From positions 171,594 to 235,593 of IMG/VR virus record IMGVR_UViG_3300026518_000006: a DNA stretch of 64,000 bases. The stretch is one strand, 5' to 3'. Both the position numbers and the translations under genes were made by a program. Numbering within the stretch: position 1 is the first letter of the stretch; each line of letters begins with the position of its first letter. This document shows, one piece after another, positions 2,676-37,893 of this stretch. A model generated the notes under the pieces. It did no database searches, was not told where the DNA came from, and saw nothing but the letters and a program-made list of their open reading frames with translations.

Positions 2676-4961
2676 ATGGCTATTCAATTTAAAGGTTCAA
2701 ATATATCAGGTGTAGTTCCTGATATGTCTGAATTAGCAGAAAGAGAAATCGGGATAAACACTGCTGATGGTAAACTCTTCACCAATGACGGCTCAGGCAT
2801 AATTGAAATTGATGCTTCAAAAACAAACACAGGTTTAGAATTAATCAATGGTGTTGTTAGTTGGAGATTAGTTGGTCAAAATGTTGGTCAAAGTATTGGG
2901 GTTAGTGCTATTGAATTATGTACAGATAATCCAAGTACAGGAGCGATTGGAAATTTTTCTATCGCAATAGGAGATAAAGCGACAGCATTAAATACAAGAG
3001 ATATCGCTATTGGTAATGATGTTGCCGTTGGAAGTCCCGATAGTCTTAGTATTGGTTATGATAATGTTGTTGGCTCAACAAATTCATCAGGCAATATAGT
3101 TATTGGTATTCATAACACCGCAACAAATTCGAATCCATCAAACAACAACACTATAATTTATGGCAATAATAATGATATTAGTGGATTTAACTCTATTGCG
3201 GTGGGATATAACAATACAAATGGAAGCTCAACAAATGAAAATAGTGTACTGTTTGGTGTAGGTTTGTCGGGGGGGGATAAGAAAACTGTAATTGGTATGT
3301 ATAATGACACAACAGCTATTCCAAATAGTGTATTTGAAGTTGGTGCGGGAAATCTTGCAGGAACAAAAACAGTATTCGGTATCAATAATGATGGGGTTGC
3401 TATAGTACCTACCGCTACACCTGCAAACATCACTAATGCAGGCGCATATGCAATAGTAACATCAGGATATCTTGCAGACCCCGCTACACTTGGTGTTTCT
3501 AAGGTAAATAATCAAACAGGTGAAGTATTCCTATACACTAATGATGTACCTACTTCGAATGATAAACTTTATATTAGTCAATCGAAACTTGATTTGATAG
3601 ATACAAATGCCTCAAATATCTCAACACTTGATTCAACAAAACAGGATAATATTATATACGGCAACGCAGGTCAAATTATGACCACAAACGGTGCTTCTGA
3701 TGGATATAATTGGATTGATTTCTCTATTCTAAATAATATCGATGTTGTTGACACAATGGGTTCAGCGGGTCAATATATGAGAGTCAACACAGCAGGCACT
3801 CAAATTATATTTGAAGATATGACTGCTACTGTTATCGGACTTGATAAAGTTGAAAATATGTCGCCATTAGAATTGGCTACTTCTGAGTTTCTACCTGATG
3901 GAACCACAAGAAACCCTATAGACCAACGATTTGATGGATTGGATGAAAACAAAATAAATGCTCCGGGAGTTCCTGACACAGACCAAGTTGGGGCGGTTTT
4001 ACAGGTAGAGTCTACAAATGGCGTGGACGCCTATACTACAAGATGGACGGATTTCACATTTTATGAGCTTGGTGATGTTACTCAATATGTCCCGACAACA
4101 GATGACGGCAAATTTTTGAGATTAGCAACTCCTTTGGTAAATGGTAGCCCTGCTGTTGTTTACGATAACATAGACCTCTCATATACAGCTTCTCCTACTG
4201 ATGGTAGTGTAGATATCAATAGCGGTACAAGTGCTGTTATCCCATTAGCTGATGGTACTAATGCGGGGCTTTTGGCACCTGCGGACTTTAATAAACTTAG
4301 CTACATCACTGTGACTGGAAATGTTGATTTAGATAATGTTGTAAGTGATACTTTAAGTTATGGTACAGCGGGGCAGGTATTAGCCACTAATGCTTCGGGT
4401 GATGGGTATGCTTGGGGCACAATTCCGAACACAGATTTATCTTACACTGCTTCGCCTACAGATGGTAAAGTAACAAGTTCAACAGGTACAGATGCTACAT
4501 TGCCTTTAGCTGATAGTACTAATGCAGGACTTTTATCGCCTGTTGGTTTTGATAAGCTTGGGTATATTAGTGTAACACAGGCTGTTGATTTAGATACAAT
4601 GGAAACGGATATAGCCACTAATGCAACCAACATAGCAAACAATACGACAGCAATCAACACAAAAGCGGAAAAGATTACCTACACAAGCCTTACCTCTAAT
4701 GGGATGGCTTCCGCTAATAATTACTATTTTGCTGATACTTCAGGGGGAGCAATTACATTAACCCTACCAAACGGTAATGCAGGTGATGTGGTTTATGTGC
4801 TTGATGTTGCAAACAGTTTTGCTACAAATAACTTAACTGTTGCGGTTCAAACTGGCGACTCAATAATGGGTGTTACAGATGGAACTGTTACACTATCTAC
4901 AGGAAATGAAGAAGCGAAAATGATTTACGCAGGTTCTGATTGGAGAGTAATAGAGTACTAA
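2676..4961 (+). CDS. Tail fibre / receptor-binding protein
   Basis: N-terminal L.E.EIGINTADGKLF fibre motif; YadA-head-like SIAIG/DIAIG/SLSIG repeats; duplicated DLSYTASPTDG...PLADxTNAGLL unit; C-terminal YFADTSGGAITLTLP...GD.V...D....FATNNLTV domain typical of T4-like baseplate/fibre proteins. Confidence 0.75.
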   Translation: MAIQFKGSNISGVVPDMSELAEREIGINTADGKLFTNDGSGIIEIDASKTNTGLELINGVVSWRLVGQNVGQSIGVSAIELCTDNPSTGAIGNFSIAIGDKATALNTRDIAIGNDVAVGSPDSLSIGYDNVVGSTNSSGNIVIGIHNTATNSNPSNNNTIIYGNNNDISGFNSIAVGYNNTNGSSTNENSVLFGVGLSGGDKKTVIGMYNDTTAIPNSVFEVGAGNLAGTKTVFGINNDGVAIVPTATPANITNAGAYAIVTSGYLADPATLGVSKVNNQTGEVFLYTNDVPTSNDKLYISQSKLDLIDTNASNISTLDSTKQDNIIYGNAGQIMTTNGASDGYNWIDFSILNNIDVVDTMGSAGQYMRVNTAGTQIIFEDMTATVIGLDKVENMSPLELATSEFLPDGTTRNPIDQRFDGLDENKINAPGVPDTDQVGAVLQVESTNGVDAYTTRWTDFTFYELGDVTQYVPTTDDGKFLRLATPLVNGSPAVVYDNIDLSYTASPTDGSVDINSGTSAVIPLADGTNAGLLAPADFNKLSYITVTGNVDLDNVVSDTLSYGTAGQVLATNASGDGYAWGTIPNTDLSYTASPTDGKVTSSTGTDATLPLADSTNAGLLSPVGFDKLGYISVTQAVDLDTMETDIATNATNIANNTTAINTKAEKITYTSLTSNGMASANNYYFADTSGGAITLTLPNGNAGDVVYVLDVANSFATNNLTVAVQTGDSIMGVTDGTVTLSTGNEEAKMIYAGSDWRVIEY

Positions 4962-24610: not shown

Positions 24611-25744
24611 ATGGCTTGTTCATTAGAGGGTGGGTGTGGTAGCTCATCAGAAAGTATTCATATAGATATCAATACTACTAGCATTTGTAATATTGCTTGT
24701 ACTTATTGTTCAGAGGGAAATGAGTGTGGTTTGAGTACTCTATATATGGGGAATACTGAGGTAAAAGTAGAAGACTTGATTAAAAAATTAGGCAAAGACC
24801 CCGCTAAACATAAGACTATAAATTTTTGGGGGGGAGAGCCTTTTGTAAATTTTGATTTCTGCAAAGCTATTATAGACGGTTTTAAAGATGACAAAACATT
24901 TAGTTTCTTTTTTTATACCAATGGGTTGTATATACCAAATTATATCGACCAATTAAAGCGATGGAATGAAGAATTCGGGAAAGAGTTAAACGCTGATGGA
25001 CAAAATAGATTGTATCTTCAAATAAGTTATGATGGGCGACACCTCACAAATACAGTGAGAGTGGATAAAGGCGGTCACGGCACTGCTGATAGAGTTGAAA
25101 AGGCATATAAATTACTAAAAGAAAACAATATAGGAACTTCATTAAAAGCAGTGATTAGCACCGATGGTTTTCCATATCTTTTTGAAAGCTTTAAAGATTT
25201 ATATGAGCTTCAAGGTTTTTATTCACCAACACCTGATTTATGGTCTGATAGAAGTGAAGAAGAGTTCAATACTGATTTAGAAATACTTGGAAAAGAGCTT
25301 GAGAAGATAGCAAAGTATATATACCAAAATGATTTGAGTCCTGAAGTATTTAGTTGGTTTGCTAAATCAAGAGCGATTTGTAGTACAGGTGCGGGTATGC
25401 TTAGTATAGACCTTGATGGTGGCATATACCCTTGTCACGCAGGTATGTATGGTGAAAGCGAAGAGCATAAAATAGGAGAGCTTGAAGATTGGGAACATAT
25501 TAGAGAAAATGTTATGGATGACTTTAAAAAAATTAATACCAATCTTCCATTGGAATGTCAAACTTGTGATGTAAATTATTGTATGAAGTGCCAAATATCA
25601 AACTACGCAAAATCTACAAAAGATACATACGAGGAAAGATTTACAGATTATCAAGCAAATTGGCAGGTTTGCAAAATATTTAAAATGAACGACAAATATA
25701 ATAAAACACTGAGATATGCAATGACACAAAAAGGATTGAGATGA
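24611..25744 (+). CDS. Radical SAM/SPASM enzyme 1
   Basis: CNIACTYC, FWGGEP, TNG, ISYDG; SPASM cysteines CSTG...YPCH...CQTC....CMKC. Confidence 0.93.
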   Translation: MACSLEGGCGSSSESIHIDINTTSICNIACTYCSEGNECGLSTLYMGNTEVKVEDLIKKLGKDPAKHKTINFWGGEPFVNFDFCKAIIDGFKDDKTFSFFFYTNGLYIPNYIDQLKRWNEEFGKELNADGQNRLYLQISYDGRHLTNTVRVDKGGHGTADRVEKAYKLLKENNIGTSLKAVISTDGFPYLFESFKDLYELQGFYSPTPDLWSDRSEEEFNTDLEILGKELEKIAKYIYQNDLSPEVFSWFAKSRAICSTGAGMLSIDLDGGIYPCHAGMYGESEEHKIGELEDWEHIRENVMDDFKKINTNLPLECQTCDVNYCMKCQISNYAKSTKDTYEERFTDYQANWQVCKIFKMNDKYNKTLRYAMTQKGLR

Positions 25745-26364
25745 GTGCCAAACTCACATCTCAAGAGCTCAAAGATAAAGCAAATAAAAACAATCCTGAT
25801 GTGCAAATCATAGGTAAATATATAAATTCCAAAACAAACATCTATGTTATTTGTAAATGTGGCAATACGACATCTGTTAGACCCAGTGAATTATATAAAT
25901 CTTGGCGATGTTTTGAGTGTGGTATAAAAGCAAGAAAATACATAAATGGAAATGGAGGATGGTCAACTAAAAGAAATAAAGAAGCTAAAAACAGAATAAT
26001 TCAAAAACACAAAGAATTATTATCCAAAAAATTGCCACATATTGAGTTGGTAGGAGATTATGAGGACAGTAAAACAAAGACAAATTATATCTGTTTTAAG
26101 GTTGGATTAACTCTTTATAAGTATAATGATGTTACGAAATGTATAAAAAATCGCTTTAGAAAAGAGAATAATAATATACTTCTGTTAGGATATATTATAT
26201 TCAAAAATGGAGCGGAAGGTTATGAGTTGGAGCAAAGAATCTTAAATTCTCATCAAAAATATAACTCGGATATTTTGCAATTTGGTGGTAATTCCGAACT
26301 GTTATCTGAGAATATTATTGCTCTCGATAAATACAAATTCATAAAAACAAAGGAAATTATATGA
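25741..26364 (+). mobile_element. Homing-endonuclease-like gene (zinc-ribbon repeats plus GIY-YIG/T5orf172-like C-terminus), apparently internally truncated
   Basis: YINSKT....CKCG...CFECG repeat; a second repeat runs straight into FKVGLT...RF...ELEQ...GNSEL and lacks the YLY segment seen in 34201-34911. Confidence 0.6.
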
Positions 26365-27660
26365 AAACAAACACAACAAACACAACAAACACACAAAAAT
26401 ATACTGAGCTTCAAGACAATAATATAAAAATGAAGTACAATATGAAAACAAACACAACAAACACAACAACCAAAATTAATACCAAAAAACCAACACAAAA
26501 AAGTAAAGGTAATGGATTTAAAACATTTACACTTGAAGTACAAACAACACAAAAATGCAATTTGGGCTGTCCTCGGCTTTGCCGATAAGTTAATTTTTTA
26601 GTATTTAGAGTAAATACCTTATTGCTATGTAGCAAATAGAGACCTTTTTCTTACACCTGAAGTATTTGATAAAAGTTTCGAAAGAATTATTGATTTAATG
26701 CAGAGAAGTGGCACTACCAATTTGAATATTAGTTTTTTTGGTGGCGAGCCTTTATTAAATTTTGAAGTTATCAAGCATATTACTAAAAGAGTTGAAGCAC
26801 TCCCTATTAGAACAGACTTAGTTTTAATTTCAAATATGACTATGATTACAGAAGAAATTTCAGACTTTTTGTTTGAGCATAATATTGGTGTGTCTTGGTC
26901 TTTCGATGGTATGGGGTCTAATGAAACAAGACCACTTTTGCCTATTTTTGAAAACAAGAATAAAGACGGAAAATTATACAATGGAATTTTAGACCTCTAT
27001 GAAGACAAAAAAGACCTTATTTTAAAGCACACCAACGGCTGTAAAATTATGATTTGGGCAGGAAATATGCACCAAATGAGCGAAAATTTAGACTTCTTTG
27101 TTGATTGGGGTTTAACAGGGCTTGATTACTCATTAGTAAGAGATGATGTGTGGACTAAAGATGATTTGATAGCATTTAGAGGACATCTAAGAGACTTAGC
27201 CGATAAGTATATTCAGTACACAAAAAAAGGTGTCCCTTTACATATAGGTTTTTTTGATTTAGCTATTGGTGATAATGTTATTAACTTTACATTTGGCAAA
27301 AGAGATTTCGGGTGTTTTGCAGGTGTAAATGGTGCAAATATGACACCAACAGGAGAGTTCTACCCTTGTGCTAGATTTGCTACAAAATCACTTATGAAAA
27401 TTGATGATGAGTATGATTTTAATTATTGGGCTGAACAATTTAGACCTGCCAATTATGATAAATGCAAGACTTGTGATATTCAACAAGTTTGTAACGCAGG
27501 ATGTACCTTTAGTCAAGTTAGAAATGACAATAAACCTGTGGATAGTGTTTGTGAGTTGTATCATATGATACAAGAAGAAACGATTAGAATAGTACACGAA
27601 TTAAAAGACAACGAGTTGTTTCAAGAACAGGTTATGTCATTATTTAACAATATGGGGTGA
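26361..27660 (+). CDS. Radical SAM/SPASM enzyme 2, interrupted by a 46-nt coding gap (join 26361..26573, 26620..27660; about 417 aa)
   Basis: CNLGCP ends at 26573 and YCYVANRD resumes at 26620, in frame with the 26698..27660 ORF (FFGGEP, SFDG, CFAG...YPCARF, CKTC....CNAGC); joining restores CNLGCPYC. Confidence 0.88.
26574..26619 (+). other. Candidate programmed translational bypass (hop) element
   Basis: CCT take-off (26571-73) and CCT landing (26617-19); hairpin TCGGC-TTT-GCCGA then TAA; hairpin GTATTTA-GAG-TAAATAC; GAG 6 nt before the landing codon. Confidence 0.7.
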
Positions 27661-28046
27661 TTATGGTGGGTTATATTTTAGAGTTTATATTTGAGTTATT
27701 GATTGGAATAATTACTATTGTAACAGCGTTGGTTATTATTATATTTGGGTTTGTATTTTTGTCTGTGGCAAATCTATTTGATAAATTATCTGATAAATTA
27801 TCTGATAAATTCTTTAGTAAAATAGAAACAAAAAAGGATAAAAATTGAGTTGTGAAACTGAACACAAAAACATAGATATAAATGATTTAGAAACAATGTT
27901 ACAAGAAGCCCGTAAAGGCAGAGCCAAAATAGACAAACAATATGTAGATTTTGATGAAAAAGGTCATTTGTTTGAATACAATATAGACTTTAATCAGTTT
28001 TTAGATGATATTAATTATATATTTAAAAAACACAAAGAGCGAAGTA

Positions 28047-28877
28047 GTGGACAAAAGAAATAATATCAGCACTCAAAATACCAACCTTGTGTATTTTACC
28101 ACAGCCTGCAATCTAGGGTGCACATATTGTTTCGAACAACTTGACAATATAAAACCAAAGCACATTCCAATACAAGAGTTGTATAAGATTGCAGACCGAG
28201 TTATAGAAGCTGAAGACCCCAACCTACAAACTCATTTTGTATTATATGGTGGAGAAGCAACACTTCGTTGGAAAGAAGCTGAACTCTTTATGGAATATGC
28301 ACACTCAAAAAAGAACAATGTCACATTTAACCTAATCACAAATGGAATATTGTTTTTAGATGATGAGTTTTTTAAGAATTTCTTTAGTAATAAATATTAT
28401 AATAATGGTATGCTCAGTATTGATATCTCATTTGATGGAGATAAGGGTAATGTTGAGCGTGTGTATAAAGATGGTGGAAGTAGTACTGAAGATGTTATTA
28501 TGGTTTTCAGTAAACTTAAAGTTTATAATCTTCGTTGGAGATTACGATACACAATTCACAAAAAAAACATAGATACTTTTGTTTATGATATTAAGAAATT
28601 GATTAAACATTTCAAACCCGAAAGAGTAATAAAAAATGTAGTATATCACGAACTTGATGAAAACGACCTATCTATGTTGGAGAAAGGCTTTGAGGAACTA
28701 AAGAAGAATTGGGATAACAAAAAAGACACTCCTATTTGTGATTTAGTTTGCGATACTTGTGATGGGTGTTCTATGACATTTGAAAACTATGCTAACCATA
28801 CTCCTGTAGGCACAAGCGTACATCCCAAGCAACAAGCTAAAATATATGATACTCTTGATAAACTAAAATATAAATAA
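28047..28877 (+). CDS. Radical SAM enzyme 3
   Basis: CNLGCTYC, YGGEA, TNG, ISFDG; C-terminal CDLVCDTCDGC; probable GTG start at 28047. Confidence 0.9.
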   Translation: MDKRNNISTQNTNLVYFTTACNLGCTYCFEQLDNIKPKHIPIQELYKIADRVIEAEDPNLQTHFVLYGGEATLRWKEAELFMEYAHSKKNNVTFNLITNGILFLDDEFFKNFFSNKYYNNGMLSIDISFDGDKGNVERVYKDGGSSTEDVIMVFSKLKVYNLRWRLRYTIHKKNIDTFVYDIKKLIKHFKPERVIKNVVYHELDENDLSMLEKGFEELKKNWDNKKDTPICDLVCDTCDGCSMTFENYANHTPVGTSVHPKQQAKIYDTLDKLKYK

Positions 28878-29270: not shown

Positions 29271-29783
29271 ATGAGTGATTGGCTAAAAAATCCATACGGA
29301 ACCCCAGGAGGAGACGAAAAAACTTATTCTTCTGAAGAATTAGCTCAAATGGGGGTAAATATAGGTGAGTTAATCACCAATGAAAAATTCAATTATTTAT
29401 CAGGGAAAGTTAAAAACGAATCTGCAAGAAGAGGTGTGGGGGTACCTGATTATGAGCGAAATGACGGTGAACTTATCACCGCTGTGGATTACAATGTGAT
29501 AATTGACAGAATTAATAATGTGTTGGATATTCCGAGAAACCCTGATGGAGCAGATTTACCACATTTGTCAAATGTTGCTATTGGAGATTTAATAACCGCT
29601 TTAATTCACAATAATATAAAAAACAAGCTTGTTGATGCAGGAAATCAATGTATGTGTAACTGTAATTACTGTGCTTGTAACTGTAATCAGTGCATCTGTA
29701 ACTGTAATCACGCTTGTGTGTGTAACTGTAATTATTCTGATGAACGACTTAAAACAAATATCGTTTATATAGGTGTTTTTTAA
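29271..29783 (+). CDS. Cys-rich protein ending in the first motif of a Peptidase_S74 chaperone domain; candidate radical SAM substrate
   Basis: Three G(E/D)LIT....N repeats, then CMCNCNYCACNCNQCICNCNHACVCNCNY (12 Cys) and SDERLKTNI. Confidence 0.75.
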   Translation: MSDWLKNPYGTPGGDEKTYSSEELAQMGVNIGELITNEKFNYLSGKVKNESARRGVGVPDYERNDGELITAVDYNVIIDRINNVLDIPRNPDGADLPHLSNVAIGDLITALIHNNIKNKLVDAGNQCMCNCNYCACNCNQCICNCNHACVCNCNYSDERLKTNIVYIGVF

Positions 29784-30082
29784 TGTTTGGTTGGAATTTT
29801 ATAAAGGCATTAAAGCCCGCCAAATATGAGTACTCAAGTGTGGATGATAATCTTGAAATATCGAAAGATGGTAGAACTCATTTTGGAGTTATGGCGCAAG
29901 ATATTGAAGAATACCTGAAAAGTGTTTCTGATGAAGATTTCGCTATAATAGAAAAAGACGAAAACGGGTATATGATGGTAAATTATACCGAGCTGATTGC
30001 CCCTATGATAGCCACTATCCAACAACTTCAAGAAAGAGTGGAAGAACTAGAAATCCAAGTTTCTAACCACTCTTCAAAATAA
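29783..30082 (+). CDS. Remainder of the Peptidase_S74 / intramolecular chaperone domain
   Basis: FIKALKP..YEY, HFGVMAQDIE, VNYTELIAPMIATIQQLQERVEELE; TAATG overlap with the upstream gene and AGGTG SD. Confidence 0.85.
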   Translation: MFGWNFIKALKPAKYEYSSVDDNLEISKDGRTHFGVMAQDIEEYLKSVSDEDFAIIEKDENGYMMVNYTELIAPMIATIQQLQERVEELEIQVSNHSSK

Positions 30083-31561: not shown

Positions 31562-32438
31562 ACTTGACGGTGATTTAACTTTGACTTATAGTTGGAGTAA
31601 CAATAATCACGGTATTTGTGGACACACTTTTGAAGTAATTGAGTACTACTTTATACTGAAGGACTTTTTTGATACAAACATTTTATTATGTGAAGATATT
31701 ACACCTGAAATATTTAAATCGGCTATTGAGGACAAATATGATTTCACAAAAGAAGAAATTGCAGATATTTTAAACAATACAAAGTTTATTAATAGACCTA
31801 TATTATTAAAAGGAAAGAATATTTTATTTGTTGATGGTGGAATTATTAACACCAACAACTACACTCTCCTATTTGACAATATTTTTTACTTTGCTTGCGG
31901 GAATAAAGAGGTCAAACATAACAATAAAAACAATGTTTATATTTTACAAGATGATAGAGTATATGAGCCTGTTGTTAAGAATGGCATAAATTATAAAAAG
32001 AAGTTATTATTTGATAGAATGAAGCCTATCAAAAACAATAAAACAGCAAATCTAATCTATGTTACAAAGAATTGCCGTGATATAAATGATGAGGTATTTA
32101 AAGAGCTTGAAAAAACCTACGATGGAAACTTTTTATACTTAGGAAATGAAGAAAAATACACCTCAAATAGATTTAAATTTATGAAAATGCCCGTCCGTAA
32201 CCTTTTTAGTGAGTTTGACACCTACATATATACTGAAGTTCCAAGACACTTTGATTGTAGCCCAAGGTTCATAGCTGAATGCAAATATTATGATAAAAAA
32301 GTAATATACCACAACATCTATTATTTAGAAGAAGATTTAGGATTAAAGTGGAGAAAGTATGATATAGAAAATGACTTTAATTCACTATTCTTAACTAAAG
32401 ACGATGACTTAATACCTATTATAAAGAGTATAATATGA
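31548..32438 (+). CDS. Putative glycosyltransferase-like protein (paralog B)
   Basis: GHTFEVIEYY...FSEFDTYIY...SPRFIAECKYYDKKV. Confidence 0.4.
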   Translation: MKIVKLDGDLTLTYSWSNNNHGICGHTFEVIEYYFILKDFFDTNILLCEDITPEIFKSAIEDKYDFTKEEIADILNNTKFINRPILLKGKNILFVDGGIINTNNYTLLFDNIFYFACGNKEVKHNNKNNVYILQDDRVYEPVVKNGINYKKKLLFDRMKPIKNNKTANLIYVTKNCRDINDEVFKELEKTYDGNFLYLGNEEKYTSNRFKFMKMPVRNLFSEFDTYIYTEVPRHFDCSPRFIAECKYYDKKVIYHNIYYLEEDLGLKWRKYDIENDFNSLFLTKDDDLIPIIKSII

Positions 32439-33061
32439 GTGAATGCAAAAACAAATACTCTATAGCGGTTACTTATGATTGTAATTGGAATTGTGGTTTT
32501 TGTATAGTTGATACTCATCATCAACCAAAAGTAACCTTTGAGGAGCTTAAAGAAAAGATAGATGAAGTAGAGCCCTTTTCGGAAGTATCGCTTAGTGGAG
32601 GAGAACCAGGACTACTTAAACAAAACGAGCTTGAGTATTGCATAAAAACCCTTAAAAACAAAAACTGTAAAATTAATGTTAATACAAACGGAACATTTTT
32701 TGTAAATCATAAAGAGTATTGTGATGATATAGATTTCTTTTATTATCATTGTTCGGAAAATTTGGATATAGATAAAGGTATATTGCTTGATGGGGTTCCG
32801 TTAGATAAAACCGAGTTTATGGTAGTATTGACAGATGAGAACTTTAAACGACTTGATTGGTTTATAGAAAACTATCCAAACATCTTATTTCGGGTAGCCT
32901 CTGCTGATGAAGCGATGGTAGGTGGAAAAAAGGGGACAACATTAAATACAAAAAATGCTATTAAAGTGTGGAAAAAACACAAAGACAAAATAACTAAAGA
33001 TAGTGTTATGTATCTACTTGAGAATTGTGTTAGTGTTAATAATGAATACAAGATAAAATAA
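32435..33061 (+). CDS. Radical SAM enzyme 4 (short)
   Basis: CNWNCGFC, LSGGEPG, NTNG. Confidence 0.9.
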   Translation: MSECKNKYSIAVTYDCNWNCGFCIVDTHHQPKVTFEELKEKIDEVEPFSEVSLSGGEPGLLKQNELEYCIKTLKNKNCKINVNTNGTFFVNHKEYCDDIDFFYYHCSENLDIDKGILLDGVPLDKTEFMVVLTDENFKRLDWFIENYPNILFRVASADEAMVGGKKGTTLNTKNAIKVWKKHKDKITKDSVMYLLENCVSVNNEYKIK

Positions 33062-33075
33062 ATTAGAGGTGTAAT

Positions 33076-34131
33076 TTGAGTAAAGTAAAGAGTCAAAGTA
33101 TTTTCAATTCAGCCTCTGTTGGAGGGATTATACCTGATACGACAGAGCCTATTTGCGAAAGAGCTAAATTAGATACAGGCACACATTGTCAAGCAAAGTG
33201 TTTTTTCTGCTATTATATTGATAGACTTGATGAGGTAACGCCTTTTGATGTTATTAGAAAAAGAATAGATTATTTGGTTGAATGCAGGATTAAAGAAGCT
33301 GATTTAAGTGGCGGGGAAAGTTCTATACATAAAGATTGGTTCAAGATACTCGACTATTGTCGAGAAAAAGGACTGAAAATTTCAACACTAAGCAATGGTA
33401 TTAAATTTGCGGATTTTGAGTTTTTAAACCAAAGTAAAGAGCACGGATTAAGTGAAATATTATTTAGCCTGCACGGTTATGATGAAGAAAGTCATAATCA
33501 AATAGTAGGGTCTAAAATAGCATTTAAAAATATCATACAATCAATAAAAAATGCTCATAAATTAGGTATAAAAGTGCGTATAAATTGTACAGTCACAAAC
33601 AAAAATTATACACAAATAGATACAAAATTTGTGGAATTAGTAAGAACACTAATGCCTTTTGAGGTAAATTTTATTACACTAAATTATTGGGATGATGCCA
33701 AAACACAAAAAACGATAGATTATAACCAAATAACCCCTCATATACATAAGGCTATCGATGAGCTTAAAGATTTTGTACCATATATTAATGTGCGTTATAC
33801 CCCTTATTGTTTTATGAAAGGGTATGAGAAATATGTGTGCAACTATTATCAGCATATATATGATATATATGATTGGAATATAGCAGTTTATGACCAAAAT
33901 ATAAGCCCTGATGAATACAAGAAAGACCCACTTAAAGCCTTATATGATAGTGCGAAAAGAAATAGATTAAACTCCTATTACAAAACAAAAGAGTGTTTTA
34001 ACTGTAAATACTACTATATATGTGATGGAATTGAAAATTCTATTCAACAAATAGAATTACATCCTGAAAGTGGAGAGAAAATAAGCAATCCAAACTTTTA
34101 TCGTAAAAACTTTTACAGTTATTCAAAATAA
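33076..34131 (+). CDS. Radical SAM enzyme 5
   Basis: CQAKCFFC, LSGGES, SNG, FSLHG; C-terminal PYC...CFNC...ICDG. Confidence 0.9.
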   Translation: MSKVKSQSIFNSASVGGIIPDTTEPICERAKLDTGTHCQAKCFFCYYIDRLDEVTPFDVIRKRIDYLVECRIKEADLSGGESSIHKDWFKILDYCREKGLKISTLSNGIKFADFEFLNQSKEHGLSEILFSLHGYDEESHNQIVGSKIAFKNIIQSIKNAHKLGIKVRINCTVTNKNYTQIDTKFVELVRTLMPFEVNFITLNYWDDAKTQKTIDYNQITPHIHKAIDELKDFVPYINVRYTPYCFMKGYEKYVCNYYQHIYDIYDWNIAVYDQNISPDEYKKDPLKALYDSAKRNRLNSYYKTKECFNCKYYYICDGIENSIQQIELHPESGEKISNPNFYRKNFYSYSK

Positions 34132-34200
34132 ACACTATTAAAGATGTAATTAAGTTTGATTAATTAAAATAATTAATCAAAACATAAGGTTAAACACAGT

Positions 34201-34911
34201 ATGAGAATTTTATCAAGAGAAGAAATCATAAAAGTTTGCGAAGAAAAGCACGGAAAGAAATACAACTACAGTCTTGTCAAGGATAGTTTAGGTTCAGACT
34301 CAATCCCTATTATTTGTGATAAACACGGTATTTTTAAACTATCTGTAAATTCCCACAAAAGAGGCGCAAGATGTCCCGTTTGTCATCCTCCTAAACTTTC
34401 TAATGAGGAAGTGATAGAGCAATTCAAAAAAGCCAATAATAACCAATACATATATGACATCACTAATTATACAAGCAATCAGACAAAAGTAGAAGTAATA
34501 TGTAAAAAACACGGAGTTTTTACGACATCCCCTGATAACCACAAAAGAGGCAACGGATGTCCTGATTGTGCGATTGATAAGATATATAAAAACAAACCTA
34601 CTTATCTTTACCATCTTAGTATTAATAATAATGGGAAGACGCAATATAAATTGGGGGTGTGTTTGAAGCGTGATTTTGATACAGTTGAAGAGGCTGTTAA
34701 TTACAGATATAGTTATGAAAAGAAGCATAATGTTGAATTTCATATACTTGATTATAAATTATATGATGATGGGGTACAGGCATATAAACTCGAACAGGCT
34801 GTCATAAATGAATTGAAAGATAAACATATACCTAAAAATGAAAGTATTATGTTTAGCGGATATACTGAAATATTTAATGAGGATTTTATATCGGATTTCA
34901 ATTTATTTTAA
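34201..34911 (+). mobile_element. Homing-endonuclease-like gene (two C.KHG.F...H..G..CP.C zinc ribbons plus GIY-YIG-like nuclease)
   Basis: ICDKHGIF...HKRGARCPVC and ICKKHGVF...HKRGNGCPDC; TYLY...YKLG...RY...LEQ...GYTEIF. Confidence 0.7.
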
Positions 34912-35032
34912 GGTTGAAATGGTATTATTCATTAATAATTTGTTAATTAATGTTGTATTTTATTAACAGATTACAAATAAAATAAGTCATTCGACTAAAA
35001 AACAAAAAATCCCAAGAGGTAAAGGAATAATT

Positions 35033-35614
35033 ATGAAGCATATTATCGCTTTTTTCGGAATTATGGCAGTTATGGTATCAACAGCAGTTGCAGGTGGGGA
35101 CATCGCACCAGTAGAGCCTGTAGTAGAGCAACCCAAGAACTTTTATGTAGGTGGCGCATTAACAGCTTCGCAAGTATATGACCAAGGTGACTCTCATTGG
35201 TTTAACGACACTGCATCAGCAGAAACAGGATATGGTCTTGGTGTTCAAGCAGGTTATGTATTCTTTAGAACAGGTGATTTTTCTTCGGCTGTAGAGGTTA
35301 GAGCTAACAGAACATTTTGGTCTTTTGCAGATGATGTTGATGGTGAAGTAACCTCTTACGGTGCTTTTGTTAAACCTGAGTATAGCTTTGGTGATTATGG
35401 TGTTTATGGTCTTGTTGGTTATGGTCAAACAAGACTTACAGGTACAGGATTCAAACAAACAGAAAATGGTTTTGCATATGGCGGTGGTGTAGAATATGCA
35501 CTTACTGAGTCATTTGCTGTATTTGTTGATTATGTGGTTAATCCTGAAATCAAAGAAACTCCGAAAGATATCGAAAATGACACTATTTCAATCGGTGTAA
35601 ACTACAAGTTCTAA
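35033..35614 (+). CDS. Outer-membrane beta-barrel protein (OMP_b-brl/porin family)
   Basis: Signal peptide, GGDIAPVEP, alternating beta strands (FYVG, GVQAGY, YGLVGYG, FAYGGGVEY), terminal GVNYKF. Confidence 0.88.
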   Translation: MKHIIAFFGIMAVMVSTAVAGGDIAPVEPVVEQPKNFYVGGALTASQVYDQGDSHWFNDTASAETGYGLGVQAGYVFFRTGDFSSAVEVRANRTFWSFADDVDGEVTSYGAFVKPEYSFGDYGVYGLVGYGQTRLTGTGFKQTENGFAYGGGVEYALTESFAVFVDYVVNPEIKETPKDIENDTISIGVNYKF

Positions 35615-35634
35615 TCCTTAATTAGAGCTATTTG

Positions 35635-35656
35635 AGAACACTCCGAAGAGTGTTCT
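35635..35656 (+). terminator. Hairpin after the OMP gene
   Basis: AGAACACTC-CGAA-GAGTGTTCT. Confidence 0.6.
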
Positions 35657-35679
35657 ATTAATAGTTTGTAAGGATATAA

Positions 35680-36369
35680 GTGAAAATAACCAATTTTAAA
35701 CTACTTCAATCGGAGCAGATGGACTATTTTGATATCAAGATAAATATCAAGATTTCCTCGCAGATAAATCAATGGACAGAAGAAGATTTTGAAACAGTAT
35801 TGGGCTTTATAGCAAAACAAAAATACAACAAAATTTGGGTTATAATTGAAACTATCGACACAAATCATTGGGAATACTTCATATATGAACTAATAAAGAT
35901 ATTCTATAATAAAGAGCTTTTAGTAGAGTTTCCTAAATTAGATATAGATGATAATAGATTGGAACTTTTTGTGACCCAAATCAACGAAATAAAATCATAC
36001 CAACAAGAGTTTGTGTTTTGTGAAGACAATAGAGTGTCGGATAAATACATAGATGATGAGGGTATATACTACAGAGAAAATGACTCCAAAAAACACCATA
36101 GAAATTTTAAAATAATAACGAAAAACAAAGAAAAGATAATCACAGAAAAAGAAGCCTTAAAACTGCCATTTAAAGATATGAAGTGTCAGAGTGGTGTGAA
36201 AAGTCTTTTTATAGATGAGATGTTAAACGCTTACCATTGTATACAAGATTGCCAGTCTGATACAAACATAATTAACTTGAAAACCAATAAAAGCGATAAT
36301 TTTTTTAAGCCCACTATATGTGAGCATAAACAATGTAAAAGCGGTTTAGATTTTGAGAAGTTTATATGA
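35680..36369 (+). CDS. Degenerate radical-SAM-like protein retaining only the C-terminal twitch/SPASM-like cysteines
   Basis: No CxxxCxxC; C-terminal CQSG..SLFID......HC...ICEHKQC matches the C-termini of neighbouring rSAMs. Confidence 0.5.
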   Translation: MKITNFKLLQSEQMDYFDIKINIKISSQINQWTEEDFETVLGFIAKQKYNKIWVIIETIDTNHWEYFIYELIKIFYNKELLVEFPKLDIDDNRLELFVTQINEIKSYQQEFVFCEDNRVSDKYIDDEGIYYRENDSKKHHRNFKIITKNKEKIITEKEALKLPFKDMKCQSGVKSLFIDEMLNAYHCIQDCQSDTNIINLKTNKSDNFFKPTICEHKQCKSGLDFEKFI

Positions 36370-37001
36370 AACTCAGTGTTTTAATACCTACCCATAATAG
36401 ACCAAAAATGTTTAAAAGAGCCCTCAGCAGTATATTGAGTGTGATGGGAAAATATAATGTTGAGATTATTGTAAGATGTGATGACAACAGTGTTACAAAA
36501 AAGGATATACCTGTAGGACATAATATCCACCTCTACCACGCTAAAAAAGACATCAATGGAATGTACAAAGAACTCTATGAAAAGAGCACAGGGGATTATA
36601 TCTATTACTTAGAGGACGATGATTATATTACGCCTTATTTTGAAACAGCATATAAAGAAGTATCAAACGGTTTAGAACTCTTTGTAGGGCTGTATAATAG
36701 TGTTAATAAAGAGACCAATATTTCGCAAATATCCGAATATCGGATAAAACACAACACCTTATATATACCAAGTGATTTTCAATTGAGTCAAATGATTTTT
36801 AAACGAAATTTAATAAAACCAAGTGATTTCCCAACATCATACCATAATGAAAATGATGAGGTGTTATTGAAAACTATTTTAGACAGAGTTAATAAAAAGA
36901 AAGTAAAGTATTCAATGCGATATATATTTAATCAGGACATTGACTATAATAACCTCAGTTTAGATGATATTTTAAAACCAAGAAAGATAAAAAATGGATA
37001 A
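36366..37001 (+). CDS. Glycosyltransferase family 2
   Basis: LSVLIPTHNRP, EIIV.CDD, GDYIYYLEDDD. Confidence 0.88.
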   Translation: MKLSVLIPTHNRPKMFKRALSSILSVMGKYNVEIIVRCDDNSVTKKDIPVGHNIHLYHAKKDINGMYKELYEKSTGDYIYYLEDDDYITPYFETAYKEVSNGLELFVGLYNSVNKETNISQISEYRIKHNTLYIPSDFQLSQMIFKRNLIKPSDFPTSYHNENDEVLLKTILDRVNKKKVKYSMRYIFNQDIDYNNLSLDDILKPRKIKNG

Positions 37002-37893
37002 TTTTGACTATTTTTATGAAGATGTAGTGAATTATAGCAACGACAACACTATTCAATTATTCATAGACATCACTACAGTTTGCAATCTTACCTGTAGCTA
37101 TTGTTTCGCACGAAAAGAAAAGGATTGGGATGAGGTTTTAGAGACAGAAAGAGTGCAGAAAATTATGACACTAATCAAACAAAGTCCTTATAATTTCAAT
37201 GTATTGTTATTCGGAGGAGAACCACTACTTCATAAAGATATAGAAACGATAATCAATATTATTAAAAAGTCAGATAAAGTAAAGAATATTATGGTGCTTT
37301 CAAACGGGACTTTAAGTGACGGATTGTATGATTTCAAAGATGTGTATTATTGCTTGACACTTCACGAACTTACAGATAAACAAATAGATAAGTTTGTGAG
37401 GCATTGTCATAAAATAGAGCCCGATAAATTGAAGATAAATATACCTTTAAATATTTACAACACTTCACTAAAAAGAGCGTACAAAAAACTAATTCAAGAG
37501 GGCTTTAAAGACAAGATATTTTTCAGTGTTATTTATGATGATGATACTAAAAATATAATACCTCTTCCTGAAATAAGAGAACGCCTTGATTATATCGACT
37601 TTACTATAGATGATAATCACTATCTCAACGGAAAGAGAATGAACTATATGGATTATTTAGATTTGCATTTATCACTAAATCCAAAAAGAGATGTAAAGAC
37701 CTGTTATATTAATGAACTAAACATAGATATTGATGGTAATATAAGTAATGATTGTATGGGTATAAATTCCAACATTTATGATGATGTTTTTTTCTTTAAA
37801 CACTTTAAATTAGGGTATAATTGCACAAAAGAACAATGTAAAGATTGTACAGGAACTATCACCTGTGCTAAAGAGTTACAGGAGAGAAAATGA
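36994..37893 (+). CDS. Radical SAM enzyme 6
   Basis: CNLTCSYC, FGGEPLLH, SNG; C-terminal Cys cluster. Confidence 0.9.
   Translation: MDNFDYFYEDVVNYSNDNTIQLFIDITTVCNLTCSYCFARKEKDWDEVLETERVQKIMTLIKQSPYNFNVLLFGGEPLLHKDIETIINIIKKSDKVKNIMVLSNGTLSDGLYDFKDVYYCLTLHELTDKQIDKFVRHCHKIEPDKLKINIPLNIYNTSLKRAYKKLIQEGFKDKIFFSVIYDDDTKNIIPLPEIRERLDYIDFTIDDNHYLNGKRMNYMDYLDLHLSLNPKRDVKTCYINELNIDIDGNISNDCMGINSNIYDDVFFFKHFKLGYNCTKEQCKDCTGTITCAKELQERK

What the first reader, a model, noticed from the sequence alone, without database searches (positions are those of the whole stretch)
26571..26622. Candidate programmed ribosomal bypass (T4 gene 60-like hop) inside the CxxxCxxC motif of a phage radical SAM gene
Seen: the gene reads TGC AAT TTG GGC TGT CCT [CGGCTTTGCCGATAAGTTAATTTTTTAGTATTTAGAGTAAATACCT] TAT TGC TAT GTA. 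Skipping exactly the 46 nt at 26574-26619 restores C-N-L-G-C-P-Y-C, matching CNLGCTYC in the next rSAM, and opens an intact 346-codon rSAM/SPASM frame. The gap has matched take-off and landing codons (CCT at 26571 and 26617). The next codon is CGG, uncommon here where Arg is mostly AGA. A hairpin TCGGC-TTT-GCCGA starts at the take-off codon and is followed by an in-frame TAA. A second hairpin GTATTTA-GAG-TAAATAC places GAG exactly 6 nt before the landing codon. The downstream frame is closed by TAG (26599) and TAA (26611), so a simple frameshift or homopolymer error cannot explain it. Established: T4 gene 60 bypasses 50 nt using matched GGA codons, a take-off hairpin, a stop codon and a GAG mini-SD 6 nt before landing; Magnusiomyces mitochondrial byps use an avoided codon after take-off. 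Inference: this is a new bypass element in a new gene class, making [4Fe-4S] binding conditional on hopping.
Basis: partly seen in the sequence, partly recalled or inferred. Interest (0 to 1): 0.93.

Follow-up and report, generated by a model that had tools for sequence, protein, structure and literature searches.

The report
Candidate ribosome-hop cassette beside homing endonuclease
A 46-base insert breaks the iron-sulfur motif of a jumbo-phage radical SAM gene, sits just downstream of a homing-endonuclease gene, and carries the signals that make ribosomes hop the gap in phage T4 gene 60, so it is a strong but unproven second, independent case of that rare decoding trick.

Summary
A 46-nt insert (26574-26619) splits CNLGCP|YC of a radical SAM/SPASM gene. 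All three frames are closed inside it, and it is flanked by CCT/CCT. Four independent assemblies carry the identical insert. About 45 related lineages have an uninterrupted motif.

New context:
- The gene just upstream (25741-26364) is a free-standing homing-endonuclease-like gene. It is intact at 326 aa in two sister contigs and internally deleted here.
- A second lineage (L025) has the orthologous endonuclease at the same place. There the motif is interrupted 2-5 nt away by a genuine 274-nt group I intron.
- Only these two endonuclease-bearing lineages are interrupted.
- The window gene alone has a new N-terminal extension with a consensus ribosome-binding site.

So this is a protective insertion in an endonuclease target site, as in T4 mobA/gene 60. 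The insert is far too short to be a group I intron. It has matched take-off and landing codons, a rare CGG after take-off, a take-off hairpin, an AU-rich tract and GAG 6 nt before landing. Random 46-mers show the last three signal features jointly at about 2e-4.

Best reading: a gene-60-like translational bypass that evolved independently (confidence about 0.58). Main rival: a gene killed by an endonuclease-driven insertion. Experiments are needed to decide.

The parts
24611..25744 (+). rSAM-1, an intact radical SAM/SPASM maturase-like gene that forms the left boundary of the cassette
   Evidence: Pfam Radical_SAM 5e-11. NCBIfam PapB and CXXX-repeat maturase-like hits. Syntenic in all relatives.
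25741..26364 (+). Free-standing homing-endonuclease-like gene, 207 aa here. It is an in-frame, internally deleted copy of a 326-aa protein with CapR/treble-clef zinc-ribbon repeats and a C-terminal T5orf172/MUG113-like (GIY-YIG clan) domain.
   Evidence: PHROG 559 'HNH endonuclease' 1.7e-11. The full-length P0122 in L020/L021 hits phrog_681 'endonuclease' at 3.4e-35 and Pfam CapR at 36.3 bits, above the cut-off. The window copy lacks 119 residues. Homologues aligned over the C-terminal domain carry PF10544/PF13455 above the cut-off. The gene is absent from all uninterrupted relatives.
26361..26514 (+). Element-encoded N-terminal extension (NTE) of the interrupted gene. ATG 26361 overlaps the endonuclease stop (ATGA) and follows an AAGGAAATTAT ribosome-binding site. 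An in-frame 81-nt duplication places a second ATG at 26442.
   Evidence: direct repeat at 26359 and 26440. The RBS consensus AAGGA is enriched 10-fold upstream of ORFs in this phage. All relatives start only 9-14 residues before the first Cys. The ancestral ATG (26512) is out of frame.
26515..26573 (+). Native-type 5' coding segment of rSAM-2 (FKTFTLEVQTTQKCNLGCP), ending in the take-off codon CCT 26571-26573
   Evidence: Matches the N-termini of P0002 and P0003.
26574..26619 (+). 46-nt coding gap. It contains the rare CGG (26574-76), the 0-frame stop TAA (26586-88), an AU-rich tract (26586-26616, 87% A+U) and the landing codon CCT (26617-19).
   Evidence: Single copy in the window. In public viral and metagenome contigs it occurs only in the source contig.
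26573..26585 (+). Take-off hairpin TCGGC-TTT-GCCGA. It starts at the third base of the take-off codon and hides a cognate CCG (26582-84) in its 3' arm.
   Evidence: Fold -6.4 kcal/mol, z-score -2.7.
26601..26617 (+). Second hairpin GTATTTA-GAG-TAAATAC. The GAG (26608-26610) lies 6 nt 5' of the landing codon and is a candidate mini Shine-Dalgarno.
   Evidence: Fold -2.8 kcal/mol, z-score -3.0. Spacing read. In gene-60 cassettes GAG, GGG, GGA or AGG lies 5-7 nt before landing.
26620..27660 (+). Downstream 346-codon part of rSAM-2 (YCYVANR... through the SPASM domain), open and conserved
   Evidence: Pfam, PHROG and NCBIfam hits. Keeps 61 of 62 family-invariant residues. Shows no more deviations than its intact sisters.
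26622..26635 (+). Small hairpin TTGCT-ATGT-AGCAA, 3 nt after the landing codon. It may act as a barrier against forward slippage (inference).
   Evidence: Present in the centroid fold. It lies in conserved coding sequence, so it is not specific to this allele.

Best explanation
The region 25741-26619 is a homing-endonuclease cassette that has invaded the 5' end of the second of three radical SAM genes.

Composition of the cassette:
- a free-standing endonuclease gene
- a new N-terminal extension with its own ribosome-binding site
- a copy of the native 5' coding segment
- a 46-nt insert placed inside the DNA that encodes CxxxCxxC

Proposed role at the DNA level (inference): the insert disrupts the endonuclease's conserved target and so protects the carrier genome from self-cleavage. 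This is by analogy with T4 MobA/gene 60 and with the intron-protected L025 allele.

Proposed role at the translation level (inference, not shown):
1. The ribosome carries peptidyl-tRNA(Pro) on CCU 26571.
2. It stalls with the rare CGG in the A site. The 5-bp GC hairpin folds there.
3. The anticodon disengages and the ribosome slides over 46 nt without decoding.
4. Guided by the GAG 6 nt upstream, it re-pairs at CCU 26617 and resumes at UAU.
5. The product is one 417-residue radical SAM/SPASM protein with CNLGCPYC restored.
6. Ribosomes that fail to hop release a 75-residue peptide at TAA 26586.

The extension lengthens the nascent chain from about 20 to 44-71 residues, enough to fill the exit tunnel, which is what gene-60 bypassing needs. 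The cassette shows no sequence homology to gene 60, so it would be an independent invention.
For: Shown directly:
- Insert, frames and matched CCT codons.
- The same insert in four assemblies.
- Uninterrupted CNLGCPYC in all endonuclease-free relatives. Interruption occurs only in the two lineages that carry the endonuclease.
- The upstream gene is endonuclease-like.
- L025 has the orthologue of that endonuclease (28% identity over the full length, E 9e-22) and a group I intron (Rfam RF00028, 86.7 bits, E 9.5e-23) at L025 3876-4149. Its splice junction GGT T|GT CCT is 2-5 nt from the window's insertion point.
- Rare CGG and both hairpins.
- GAG 6 nt before landing and an AU-rich 3' gap.
- Joint chance of the mini-SD, the rare or stop codon and the take-off hairpin is 1.75e-4. 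With the matched codon added it is 0 of 40,000.
- The NTE is unique to this allele, has a consensus AAGGA ribosome-binding site, and its 81-nt duplication is in frame.
- The downstream ORF shows no excess decay.

From the literature:
- Gene-60-type cassettes consist of an endonuclease (MobA, or VSR or GIY-YIG in some), an NTE of 44-45 aa, a homologous region and a 20-50-nt gap.
- The gap has matched codons, a stop or a rare 'hungry' Arg codon, a take-off stem-loop, a mini-SD 5-7 nt before landing and an AU-rich tract.
- The endonuclease is often pseudogenised.
- The gap blocks MobA self-cleavage (bioRxiv 10.1101/2022.08.31.505936).
Against: - There is no direct evidence of hopping.
- All insert-bearing alleles are near-identical. 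There is no covariation, and no selection test is possible.
- The only two substitutions inside the gene (L004: V60A and F334L, the latter at a conserved aromatic position) are both non-synonymous.
- One otherwise invariant Met is Leu in this allele.
- The take-off hairpin is short (5 bp, triloop) compared with T4's.
- The codon after take-off is not a stop.
- The NTE has no similarity to the T4 nascent-peptide signal.
- The features were picked post hoc by a reader looking for a T4-like pattern.
- A 3-nt junction repeat could be repair microhomology.
- The host, and so the true rarity of CGG and the strength of the anti-SD pairing, is unknown.
Confidence: 0.58

Rival explanations
1. Dead gene. 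The endonuclease cassette brought, or selected, a 46-nt disruptive insertion that protects its target site. rSAM-2 is simply inactivated, and the allele spreads by endonuclease drive despite the loss. The T4-like features are coincidence, and the CCT repeat is junction microhomology.
For: - The frame is broken in all three frames.
- The native ATG is out of frame.
- The two within-lineage substitutions are both non-synonymous, and one invariant Met is lost.
- The endonuclease itself is decaying in the window.
- The alleles are so young that an intact ORF proves nothing.
- Two paralogous rSAM genes flank it and might compensate.
Against: - The joint probability of the mini-SD spacing, the rare codon and the take-off hairpin in a random insert is about 2e-4, and lower still with matched codons.
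- The NTE has a consensus ribosome-binding site and an in-frame duplication, which a dead gene has no reason to keep.
- The gene is intact in about 420 relatives. In the only other endonuclease-bearing lineage it is kept functional by a self-splicing intron.
- There is no excess loss of conserved residues.
Confidence: 0.3
2. Split enzyme. The two ORFs are translated separately: a 75-residue peptide ending CNLGCPRLCR, and a C-terminal fragment re-initiated at ATG 26698 or at a non-canonical start near 26614. They assemble non-covalently, as with the endonuclease-split T4 gp39/gp60 or Aeh1 NrdA.
For: - Endonuclease-split phage enzymes that reassemble are known (PMC2988022).
- The read-through of the insert happens to supply a third Cys (CX3CX3C) before the stop.
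Against: - The split would fall inside the 8-residue cluster-binding loop.
- No ATG, GTG or TTG exists between the last stop (26611) and 26698, so the C-fragment would lack YCYVANR...DLMQ-proximal residues, including the third Cys.
- No ribosome-binding site precedes 26698.
- CX3CX3C is not the family motif. C20, Y22 and C23 are invariant.
Confidence: 0.05
3. RNA-level removal. The 46 nt is excised from the mRNA, as a degenerate or minimal intron, by a trans-acting splicing or ligation system, or as a remnant of a group I intron like that of L025.
For: - A genuine group I intron sits 2-5 nt away in L025.
- Short strings (AAGTTAAT, GTATT..AGAG) are shared with the ends of that intron.
Against: - 46 nt is far below the size of any self-splicing intron.
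- There is no Rfam hit, even at E<=1.
- No choice of boundary gives a terminal G.
- There is no P1-type pairing.
- The alignment to the L025 intron ends is not significant.
Confidence: 0.04
4. Sequencing or assembly artefact, or a small repeated mobile element with a 3-bp target duplication.
For: A 3-nt direct repeat flanks the insert.
Against: - Four assemblies from different samples and pipelines carry it.
- The element is single-copy in the 235.6-kb genome and absent elsewhere in the viral and metagenome collections.
- It has no terminal inverted repeats.
Confidence: 0.02

Closest known systems
Phage T4 gene 60 / MobA bypass cassette (50-nt coding gap; Huang et al. 1988; Bonocora et al. 2011; Manning & Atkins, bioRxiv 10.1101/2022.08.31.505936)
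   Same: - A free-standing homing endonuclease lies immediately upstream, and it is often decayed.
- The downstream ORF has an element-encoded N-terminal extension. It is 44 codons from the second ATG to take-off, against 46 in T4.
- A short homologous coding segment is followed by a 20-50-nt gap in a highly conserved active-site motif.
- The gap has matched take-off and landing codons.
- A stop or a rare Arg codon follows take-off. Some Acinetobacter-phage clades use rare AGG plus a later in-frame stop and a frame change, exactly as here.
- There is a GC hairpin at take-off with a cognate codon hidden inside it.
[quoted passage not shown]
   Different: - The target gene is a radical SAM/SPASM enzyme, not the topoisomerase II large subunit.
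- The endonuclease has CapR zinc ribbons plus a T5orf172/GIY-YIG-like domain, not HNH MobA.
- The gene is not split into two ORFs by the endonuclease, which sits upstream of the whole gene.
- Take-off is at a Pro CCU codon rather than Gly or Asp.
- The hairpin is shorter, with a triloop.
- There is no detectable homology of the NTE or the gap.
- Bypassing is unproven.
Collaborative homing / intron-protected targets of free-standing endonucleases (cyanophage psbA intron with F-CphI; T4 mobE with the nrdB intron; reviewed in PMC2988022)
   Same: - A free-standing endonuclease sits next to a conserved gene whose target site is interrupted by an insertion that gives immunity.
- L025 shows this arrangement, with a group I intron, at the same site and with the orthologous endonuclease.
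   Different: In the window the protective insertion is 46 nt and cannot self-splice.
Magnusiomyces capitatus mitochondrial byp elements
   Same: Short inserts with matched take-off and landing codons, an avoided codon after take-off, and a hairpin.
   Different: Byps are a multi-copy family spread over many genes of one genome. This element is single-copy, bacterial or phage in origin, and endonuclease-linked.
Streptomyces phage Hau3 terminase candidate bypass (PMC10732093)
   Same: A phage gene interrupted by short inserts, with a rare codon in the A site as the trigger.
   Different: The Hau3 gaps are 10 nt. The trigger is UUA with a regulatory tRNA. No endonuclease is involved.

Membership tests
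Gene-60-type translational bypass cassette | Matched (or wobble-equivalent) take-off and landing codons flanking a non-coding gap of 20-50 nt | tested here: met
   CCT 26571-73 and CCT 26617-19 flank a 46-nt gap. The chance of a match is 0.8%.
Gene-60-type translational bypass cassette | [quoted passage not shown] | tested here: met
   CGG is used at 1.09 per 1000 codons, 3.4% of Arg codons. The 0-frame TAA comes four codons later, and all frames are closed. Host usage is unknown.
Gene-60-type translational bypass cassette | Stem-loop that includes or abuts the take-off codon | tested here: met
   Hairpin 26573-26585, -6.4 kcal/mol, z-score -2.7. It is shorter than T4's.
Gene-60-type translational bypass cassette | Mini Shine-Dalgarno (GAG/GGG/GGA/AGG) 5-7 nt 5' of the landing codon, in AU-rich sequence | tested here: met
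   GAG 26608-10 lies 6 nt before CCT. The tract 26586-26616 is 87% A+U. The phage uses SD-type sites.
Gene-60-type translational bypass cassette | Element-encoded N-terminal extension supplying a nascent-peptide signal | tested here: inconclusive
   The extension is present and unique to this allele. It gives 44 or 71 residues before take-off. It has no similarity to the T4 signal, and its function cannot be tested here.
Gene-60-type translational bypass cassette | Linked homing endonuclease, with the gap lying in its conserved target | tested here: met
   The endonuclease-like gene is adjacent. Interruption co-occurs with the endonuclease in 2 of 2 lineages and in 0 of about 45 without it. 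Cleavage specificity was not tested.
Gene-60-type translational bypass cassette | Homology to the MobA element and insertion in the topoisomerase II large-subunit gene | tested here: not met
   The host gene is different. BLASTP gives no alignment for the NTE, and the DNA alignment is out of register. It is therefore not a member by descent, only an analogue.
Gene-60-type translational bypass cassette | One polypeptide made from the two ORFs | not testable with these tools
   Needs protein expression and mass spectrometry.
Group I intron | Conserved ribozyme core, 5' exon ending in U paired in P1, terminal G | tested here: not met
   No Rfam hit in the window at E<=1 or at gathering score. The insert is only 46 nt and has no terminal G. 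As a positive control, L025 scores 86.7 bits.
Free-standing homing endonuclease with a protective insertion (collaborative homing) | Endonuclease gene next to a target gene whose conserved site is interrupted only in endonuclease-bearing genomes | tested here: met
Free-standing homing endonuclease with a protective insertion (collaborative homing) | The endonuclease cleaves the uninterrupted site but not the interrupted one | not testable with these tools
   Needs an in vitro cleavage assay.
Pseudogene | Accumulated secondary lesions or relaxed selection | tested here: inconclusive
   There are no further stops or frameshifts, and 61 of 62 invariant residues are kept. Against that, both substitutions in L004 are non-synonymous, and the alleles are too similar for any dN/dS test.
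Multi-copy mini mobile element (byp / GC cluster / MITE-like) | Several copies in the genome or elsewhere | tested here: not met
   Single copy.

The most novel reading that the evidence does not exclude
Programmed long-range translational bypassing has evolved a second time in phages, independently of T4 gene 60. It would be a general alternative to a self-splicing intron for neutralising the insertion that shields a homing-endonuclease target. Here it sits inside the CxxxCxxC motif of a radical SAM enzyme, uses a Pro CCU hop and a hungry CGG, and has a purpose-built N-terminal nascent-chain extension. The paired natural experiment, in which the same endonuclease family at the same site carries an intron in one lineage and a 46-nt gap in the other, would make the origin of bypass cassettes directly testable.
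Probability: 0.55. Interest if true: 0.92.

Novelty: new variant of a known kind. Interest (0 to 1): 0.85.

Why it matters
Efficient long-range ribosome hopping is known in bacteria and phages essentially from one homologous family, the gene 60/MobA element in topoisomerase genes. Beyond that there is a weakly supported 10-nt case in a Streptomyces phage, and the yeast mitochondrial byps.

An unrelated cassette with the same logic would show that the signal set is a convergent, re-inventable solution. That set is an endonuclease, a nascent-chain extension, matched codons, a hungry codon, a take-off hairpin and a mini-SD at 6 nt. Such a cassette would also give a second, sequence-independent system for dissecting which signals are necessary.

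It would tie the origin of bypassing to endonuclease self-immunity. The sister lineage solves the identical problem with a group I intron.

Practically, it warns that short 'gene-breaking' inserts next to phage nucleases should not be annotated as pseudogenes by default.

Tried and rejected
1. The truncated-looking homologues (320-347 aa: P0004, P0071, P0032) were suspected to be further interrupted alleles. Their DNA is intact, so they are gene-call mis-starts. Only P0081/P0107 (L024/L025) are truly interrupted, by the intron.
2. I looked for other copies of the insert. Exact halves were scanned in viral contigs and a 20-mer in metagenome contigs. Only the source contig was found.
3. Phage GenBank records have no blastn match to the locus.
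4. I tested homology to T4 gene 60. There is none at the protein level, and the DNA alignment is out of register. The shared AAATACCT 8-mer is judged to be chance.
5. I tested whether the insert is an intron remnant. It has no Rfam hit, no terminal G and no significant alignment to the L025 intron ends.
6. I tested for a terminator or promoter inside the insert. None passes the scan.
7. Alignment-based scans found no further relatives of the endonuclease next to interrupted genes. Only the two copies in the same contig were recovered.
8. A search with the 75-residue N-terminal ORF for other truncated exon-1 ORFs found only L088. There the endonuclease 3' end and the first 81-nt repeat are joined to an unrelated ParA-like ORF. 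This is either a second context or an assembly chimera.
9. A selection test is not possible, because L020 and L021 are identical to the window across the gene.
10. No tRNA genes are present in the window that could bear on CGG or CCU decoding.
Full report
**1. The observation**

The window reads TGC AAT TTG GGC TGT CCT, then 46 nt (26574-26619) ending in CCT, then TAT TGC TAT GTA.
- The upstream frame, open from ATG 26361, ends at TAA 26586.
- The downstream 346-codon frame is closed inside the insert by TAG 26599 and TAA 26611.
- The third frame is closed by TAA 26591 and TAG 26606.
- The downstream piece is a radical SAM/SPASM protein (Pfam PF04055, PHROG 1802 at 6e-32, NCBIfam PapB-like and SPASM).
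- CGG is rare, at 15 of 438 Arg codons and 1.09 per 1000 codons.

**2. It is real DNA and specific to one lineage**

The identical 46 nt occurs in three further assemblies from other samples and pipelines: L004, L020 and L021. These differ from the window elsewhere.

About 420 homologues exist.
- The closest intact ones (P0002 at 79%, P0003 at 73%) read ...TLEVQTTQKCNLGCPYCYVAN... without interruption.
- Shorter database proteins that looked truncated are gene-call mis-starts on intact DNA.
- A census of 58 viral loci plus the other fetched loci shows a contiguous CxxxCxxC in every lineage except two.

**3. What surrounds it**

In relatives the order is rSAM-1, a small ORF or nothing, rSAM-2, a small ORF, rSAM-3. 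In the window a 207-aa ORF (25741-26364) sits between rSAM-1 and rSAM-2.
- It matches phage endonuclease families.
- L020 and L021 carry the full 326-aa form (P0122). That form hits PHROG 681 'endonuclease' at 3.4e-35 and has three CapR-homology zinc-ribbon repeats above the Pfam cut-off.
- The window copy has lost 119 residues in frame.
- Homologues that align through the C-terminal domain carry T5orf172/MUG113 (GIY-YIG clan) domains there.
- A paralogue lies at 34201-34911.

The interrupted gene also has an N-terminal extension that no relative has.
- The ancestral-type ATG (26512) is one base out of frame relative to L012.
- Translation must therefore start at ATG 26361 or at the in-frame ATG 26442. 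ATG 26361 overlaps the endonuclease stop and follows AAGGAAATTAT, the ribosome-binding-site consensus of this phage. ATG 26442 is created by an 81-nt direct duplication.
- This gives 71 or 44 residues before the take-off Pro. Relatives have 17-21.

**4. The sister case**

L025 (52% identical rSAM-2) has a 317-aa endonuclease at the same place. It aligns with P0122 over its full length (28% identity, E 9e-22).

Its rSAM-2 is interrupted between GGT T and GT CCT by a 274-nt group I intron.
- Rfam RF00028 scores 86.7 bits against a gathering score of 50, E 9.5e-23.
- The P1 pairing is UAGGUU/GACCUA, and the intron ends in a terminal G.
- A decayed duplicate of the gene's 5' end lies to the left of the endonuclease.

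The intron site and the window's insertion point are 2-5 nt apart. Only these two lineages have the endonuclease, and only these two are interrupted.

This is the arrangement described as collaborative homing (PMC2988022). A free-standing endonuclease targets a conserved coding sequence, and the carrier is protected by an insertion in that sequence. In L025 the insertion removes itself from the RNA. In the window it cannot, because it is 46 nt, has no ribozyme core, no terminal G and no Rfam hit.

**5. Comparison with the only well-understood precedent**

Manning & Atkins (bioRxiv 10.1101/2022.08.31.505936) describe the composition of gene-60 cassettes:
- an endonuclease, often decayed and sometimes GIY-YIG or VSR instead of MobA
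- an element-encoded NTE of 44-45 aa that overlaps the endonuclease ORF
- a short segment homologous to the target
- a 20-50-nt gap

The gap in those cassettes has:
- matched codons
- a stop, or in one clade a rare Arg codon followed by a later in-frame stop and a frame change
- a take-off stem-loop
- an AU-rich tract
- a mini-SD 5-7 nt before landing

The gap blocks self-cleavage by the endonuclease.

Every one of these architectural features is present here. The analogy even extends to a cognate codon (CCG 26582) buried in the take-off hairpin, as GGG is in T4 (abstract of bioRxiv 10.1101/2024.12.09.627546).

There is no sequence homology to T4, which was read from AF158101. The target gene and the endonuclease family also differ. 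If it works, it is an analogue rather than a relative.

**6. How unlikely is the pattern by chance?**

I used 40,000 random 46-mers from the window as mock inserts. The frequencies were:

| Feature | Frequency |
|---|---|
| landing CCT | 0.0084 |
| mini-SD at 5-7 nt | 0.078 |
| stop or rare codon first | 0.081 |
| hairpin of -5 kcal/mol or better at take-off | 0.018 |
| last three jointly | 1.75e-4 |
| all four | 0 of 40,000 |

The features were chosen after the fact, so these are not p-values.

**7. What argues against function**

- Nothing here shows hopping.
- The insert-bearing alleles are nearly identical. L020 and L021 have 0 differences across the gene.
- L004 has 2 differences, both non-synonymous, one at a conserved aromatic position.
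- One family-invariant Met is Leu.
- An endonuclease drive can spread a mildly harmful allele, so a gene-killing protective insert is a serious rival.
- Against decay: the downstream ORF keeps 61 of 62 invariant residues. It deviates at conserved columns no more than its intact sisters do, at 6 of 99 against 6 of 102 and 5 of 102. The age of the insertion is too small for this to be decisive.

**8. Verdict**

- Observation: confirmed.
- Origin: an endonuclease-linked protective insertion. This is well supported.
- Decoding by gene-60-like bypass: the best explanation, at about 0.58. It is inferred, not shown.
- Rivals: dead gene about 0.30. Split enzyme, RNA removal or artefact together about 0.1.
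- Novelty: a new variant of a known kind.
- Interest: high. A second, independent bypass cassette, with a natural intron-bearing counterpart at the same site, would be a notable result and is cheaply testable.

Noticed in passing
L025:3876-4149 (and L025:2812-2874, 2889-3842): A related phage contig carries a bona fide 274-nt group I intron inside the CNLG|CPYC codons of the orthologous radical SAM gene. It also has an orthologous free-standing endonuclease upstream and a decayed duplicate of the gene's 5' end (MFTLEIFITEKCNL...) to the left of the endonuclease.
   Followed up: yes
window 25741-26364 versus L020:6001-6981: The endonuclease gene is 326 aa in two sister contigs. In the window it has a clean in-frame 119-residue internal deletion between zinc-ribbon repeats, so the endonuclease is decaying while the insert stays unchanged.
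   Followed up: yes
window 29271-30082: A fibre-like protein is split from its Peptidase_S74 intramolecular-chaperone domain 15 residues into that domain (SDERLKTNIVYIGVF* / MFGWNF...). The split falls at a T6 run followed by TAA-TG (29776-29785), with the second ORF in the -1 frame. The two-ORF layout recurs in relatives L005, L012 and L020, but L006 has one fused ORF. This may be a programmed -1 frameshift or a genuine split.
   Followed up: partly
window 29271-29783 with 24611-28877: The fibre-like protein contains a Cys-rich repeat (CMCNCNYCACNCNQCICNCNHACVCNCNY). It lies directly downstream of three radical SAM genes, at least two with SPASM domains, whose best NCBIfam hits are PapB ranthipeptide and CXXX-repeat peptide maturases. 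This suggests radical-SAM cross-linking of a virion fibre. The cluster is conserved in many phage contigs.
   Followed up: partly
window 32435-37893: Further radical SAM genes lie at 32435-33061, 33076-34131 and 36994-37893. A second paralogue of the endonuclease is at 34201-34911, with no obvious interruption in its neighbours.
   Followed up: partly
L088:1-909: A 909-bp contig comes from the same sample as L004. In it the endonuclease 3' end and the first 81-nt repeat (equivalent to window 26084-26443) are joined to an unrelated ParA-like ORF. This is either a second genomic context of the endonuclease or an assembly chimera. The breakpoint coincides with the start of the second repeat copy in the window.
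   Followed up: partly
window 26650-26652 (Leu in DLFLTPE): A Met that is invariant in more than 100 homologues (...F/H-M-T/S-x-E) is Leu in this allele only. It is also the site where gene callers often mis-start the homologues.
   Followed up: no
L086 (CAZOBE010000059.1) and L087: The only cellular-genome hits to the rSAM-2 family are short or phage-like contigs, one binned to an uncultured Sulfurovum MAG and one to a Chloroflexota MAG. Together with the 30% G+C this is a weak hint of a Campylobacterota host.
   Followed up: no
L070:3001-4460: In a distant radical SAM relative (31% identity), residues 6-127 of the query span 1460 nt. That gene may therefore also carry an insertion or intron further downstream.
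   Followed up: no
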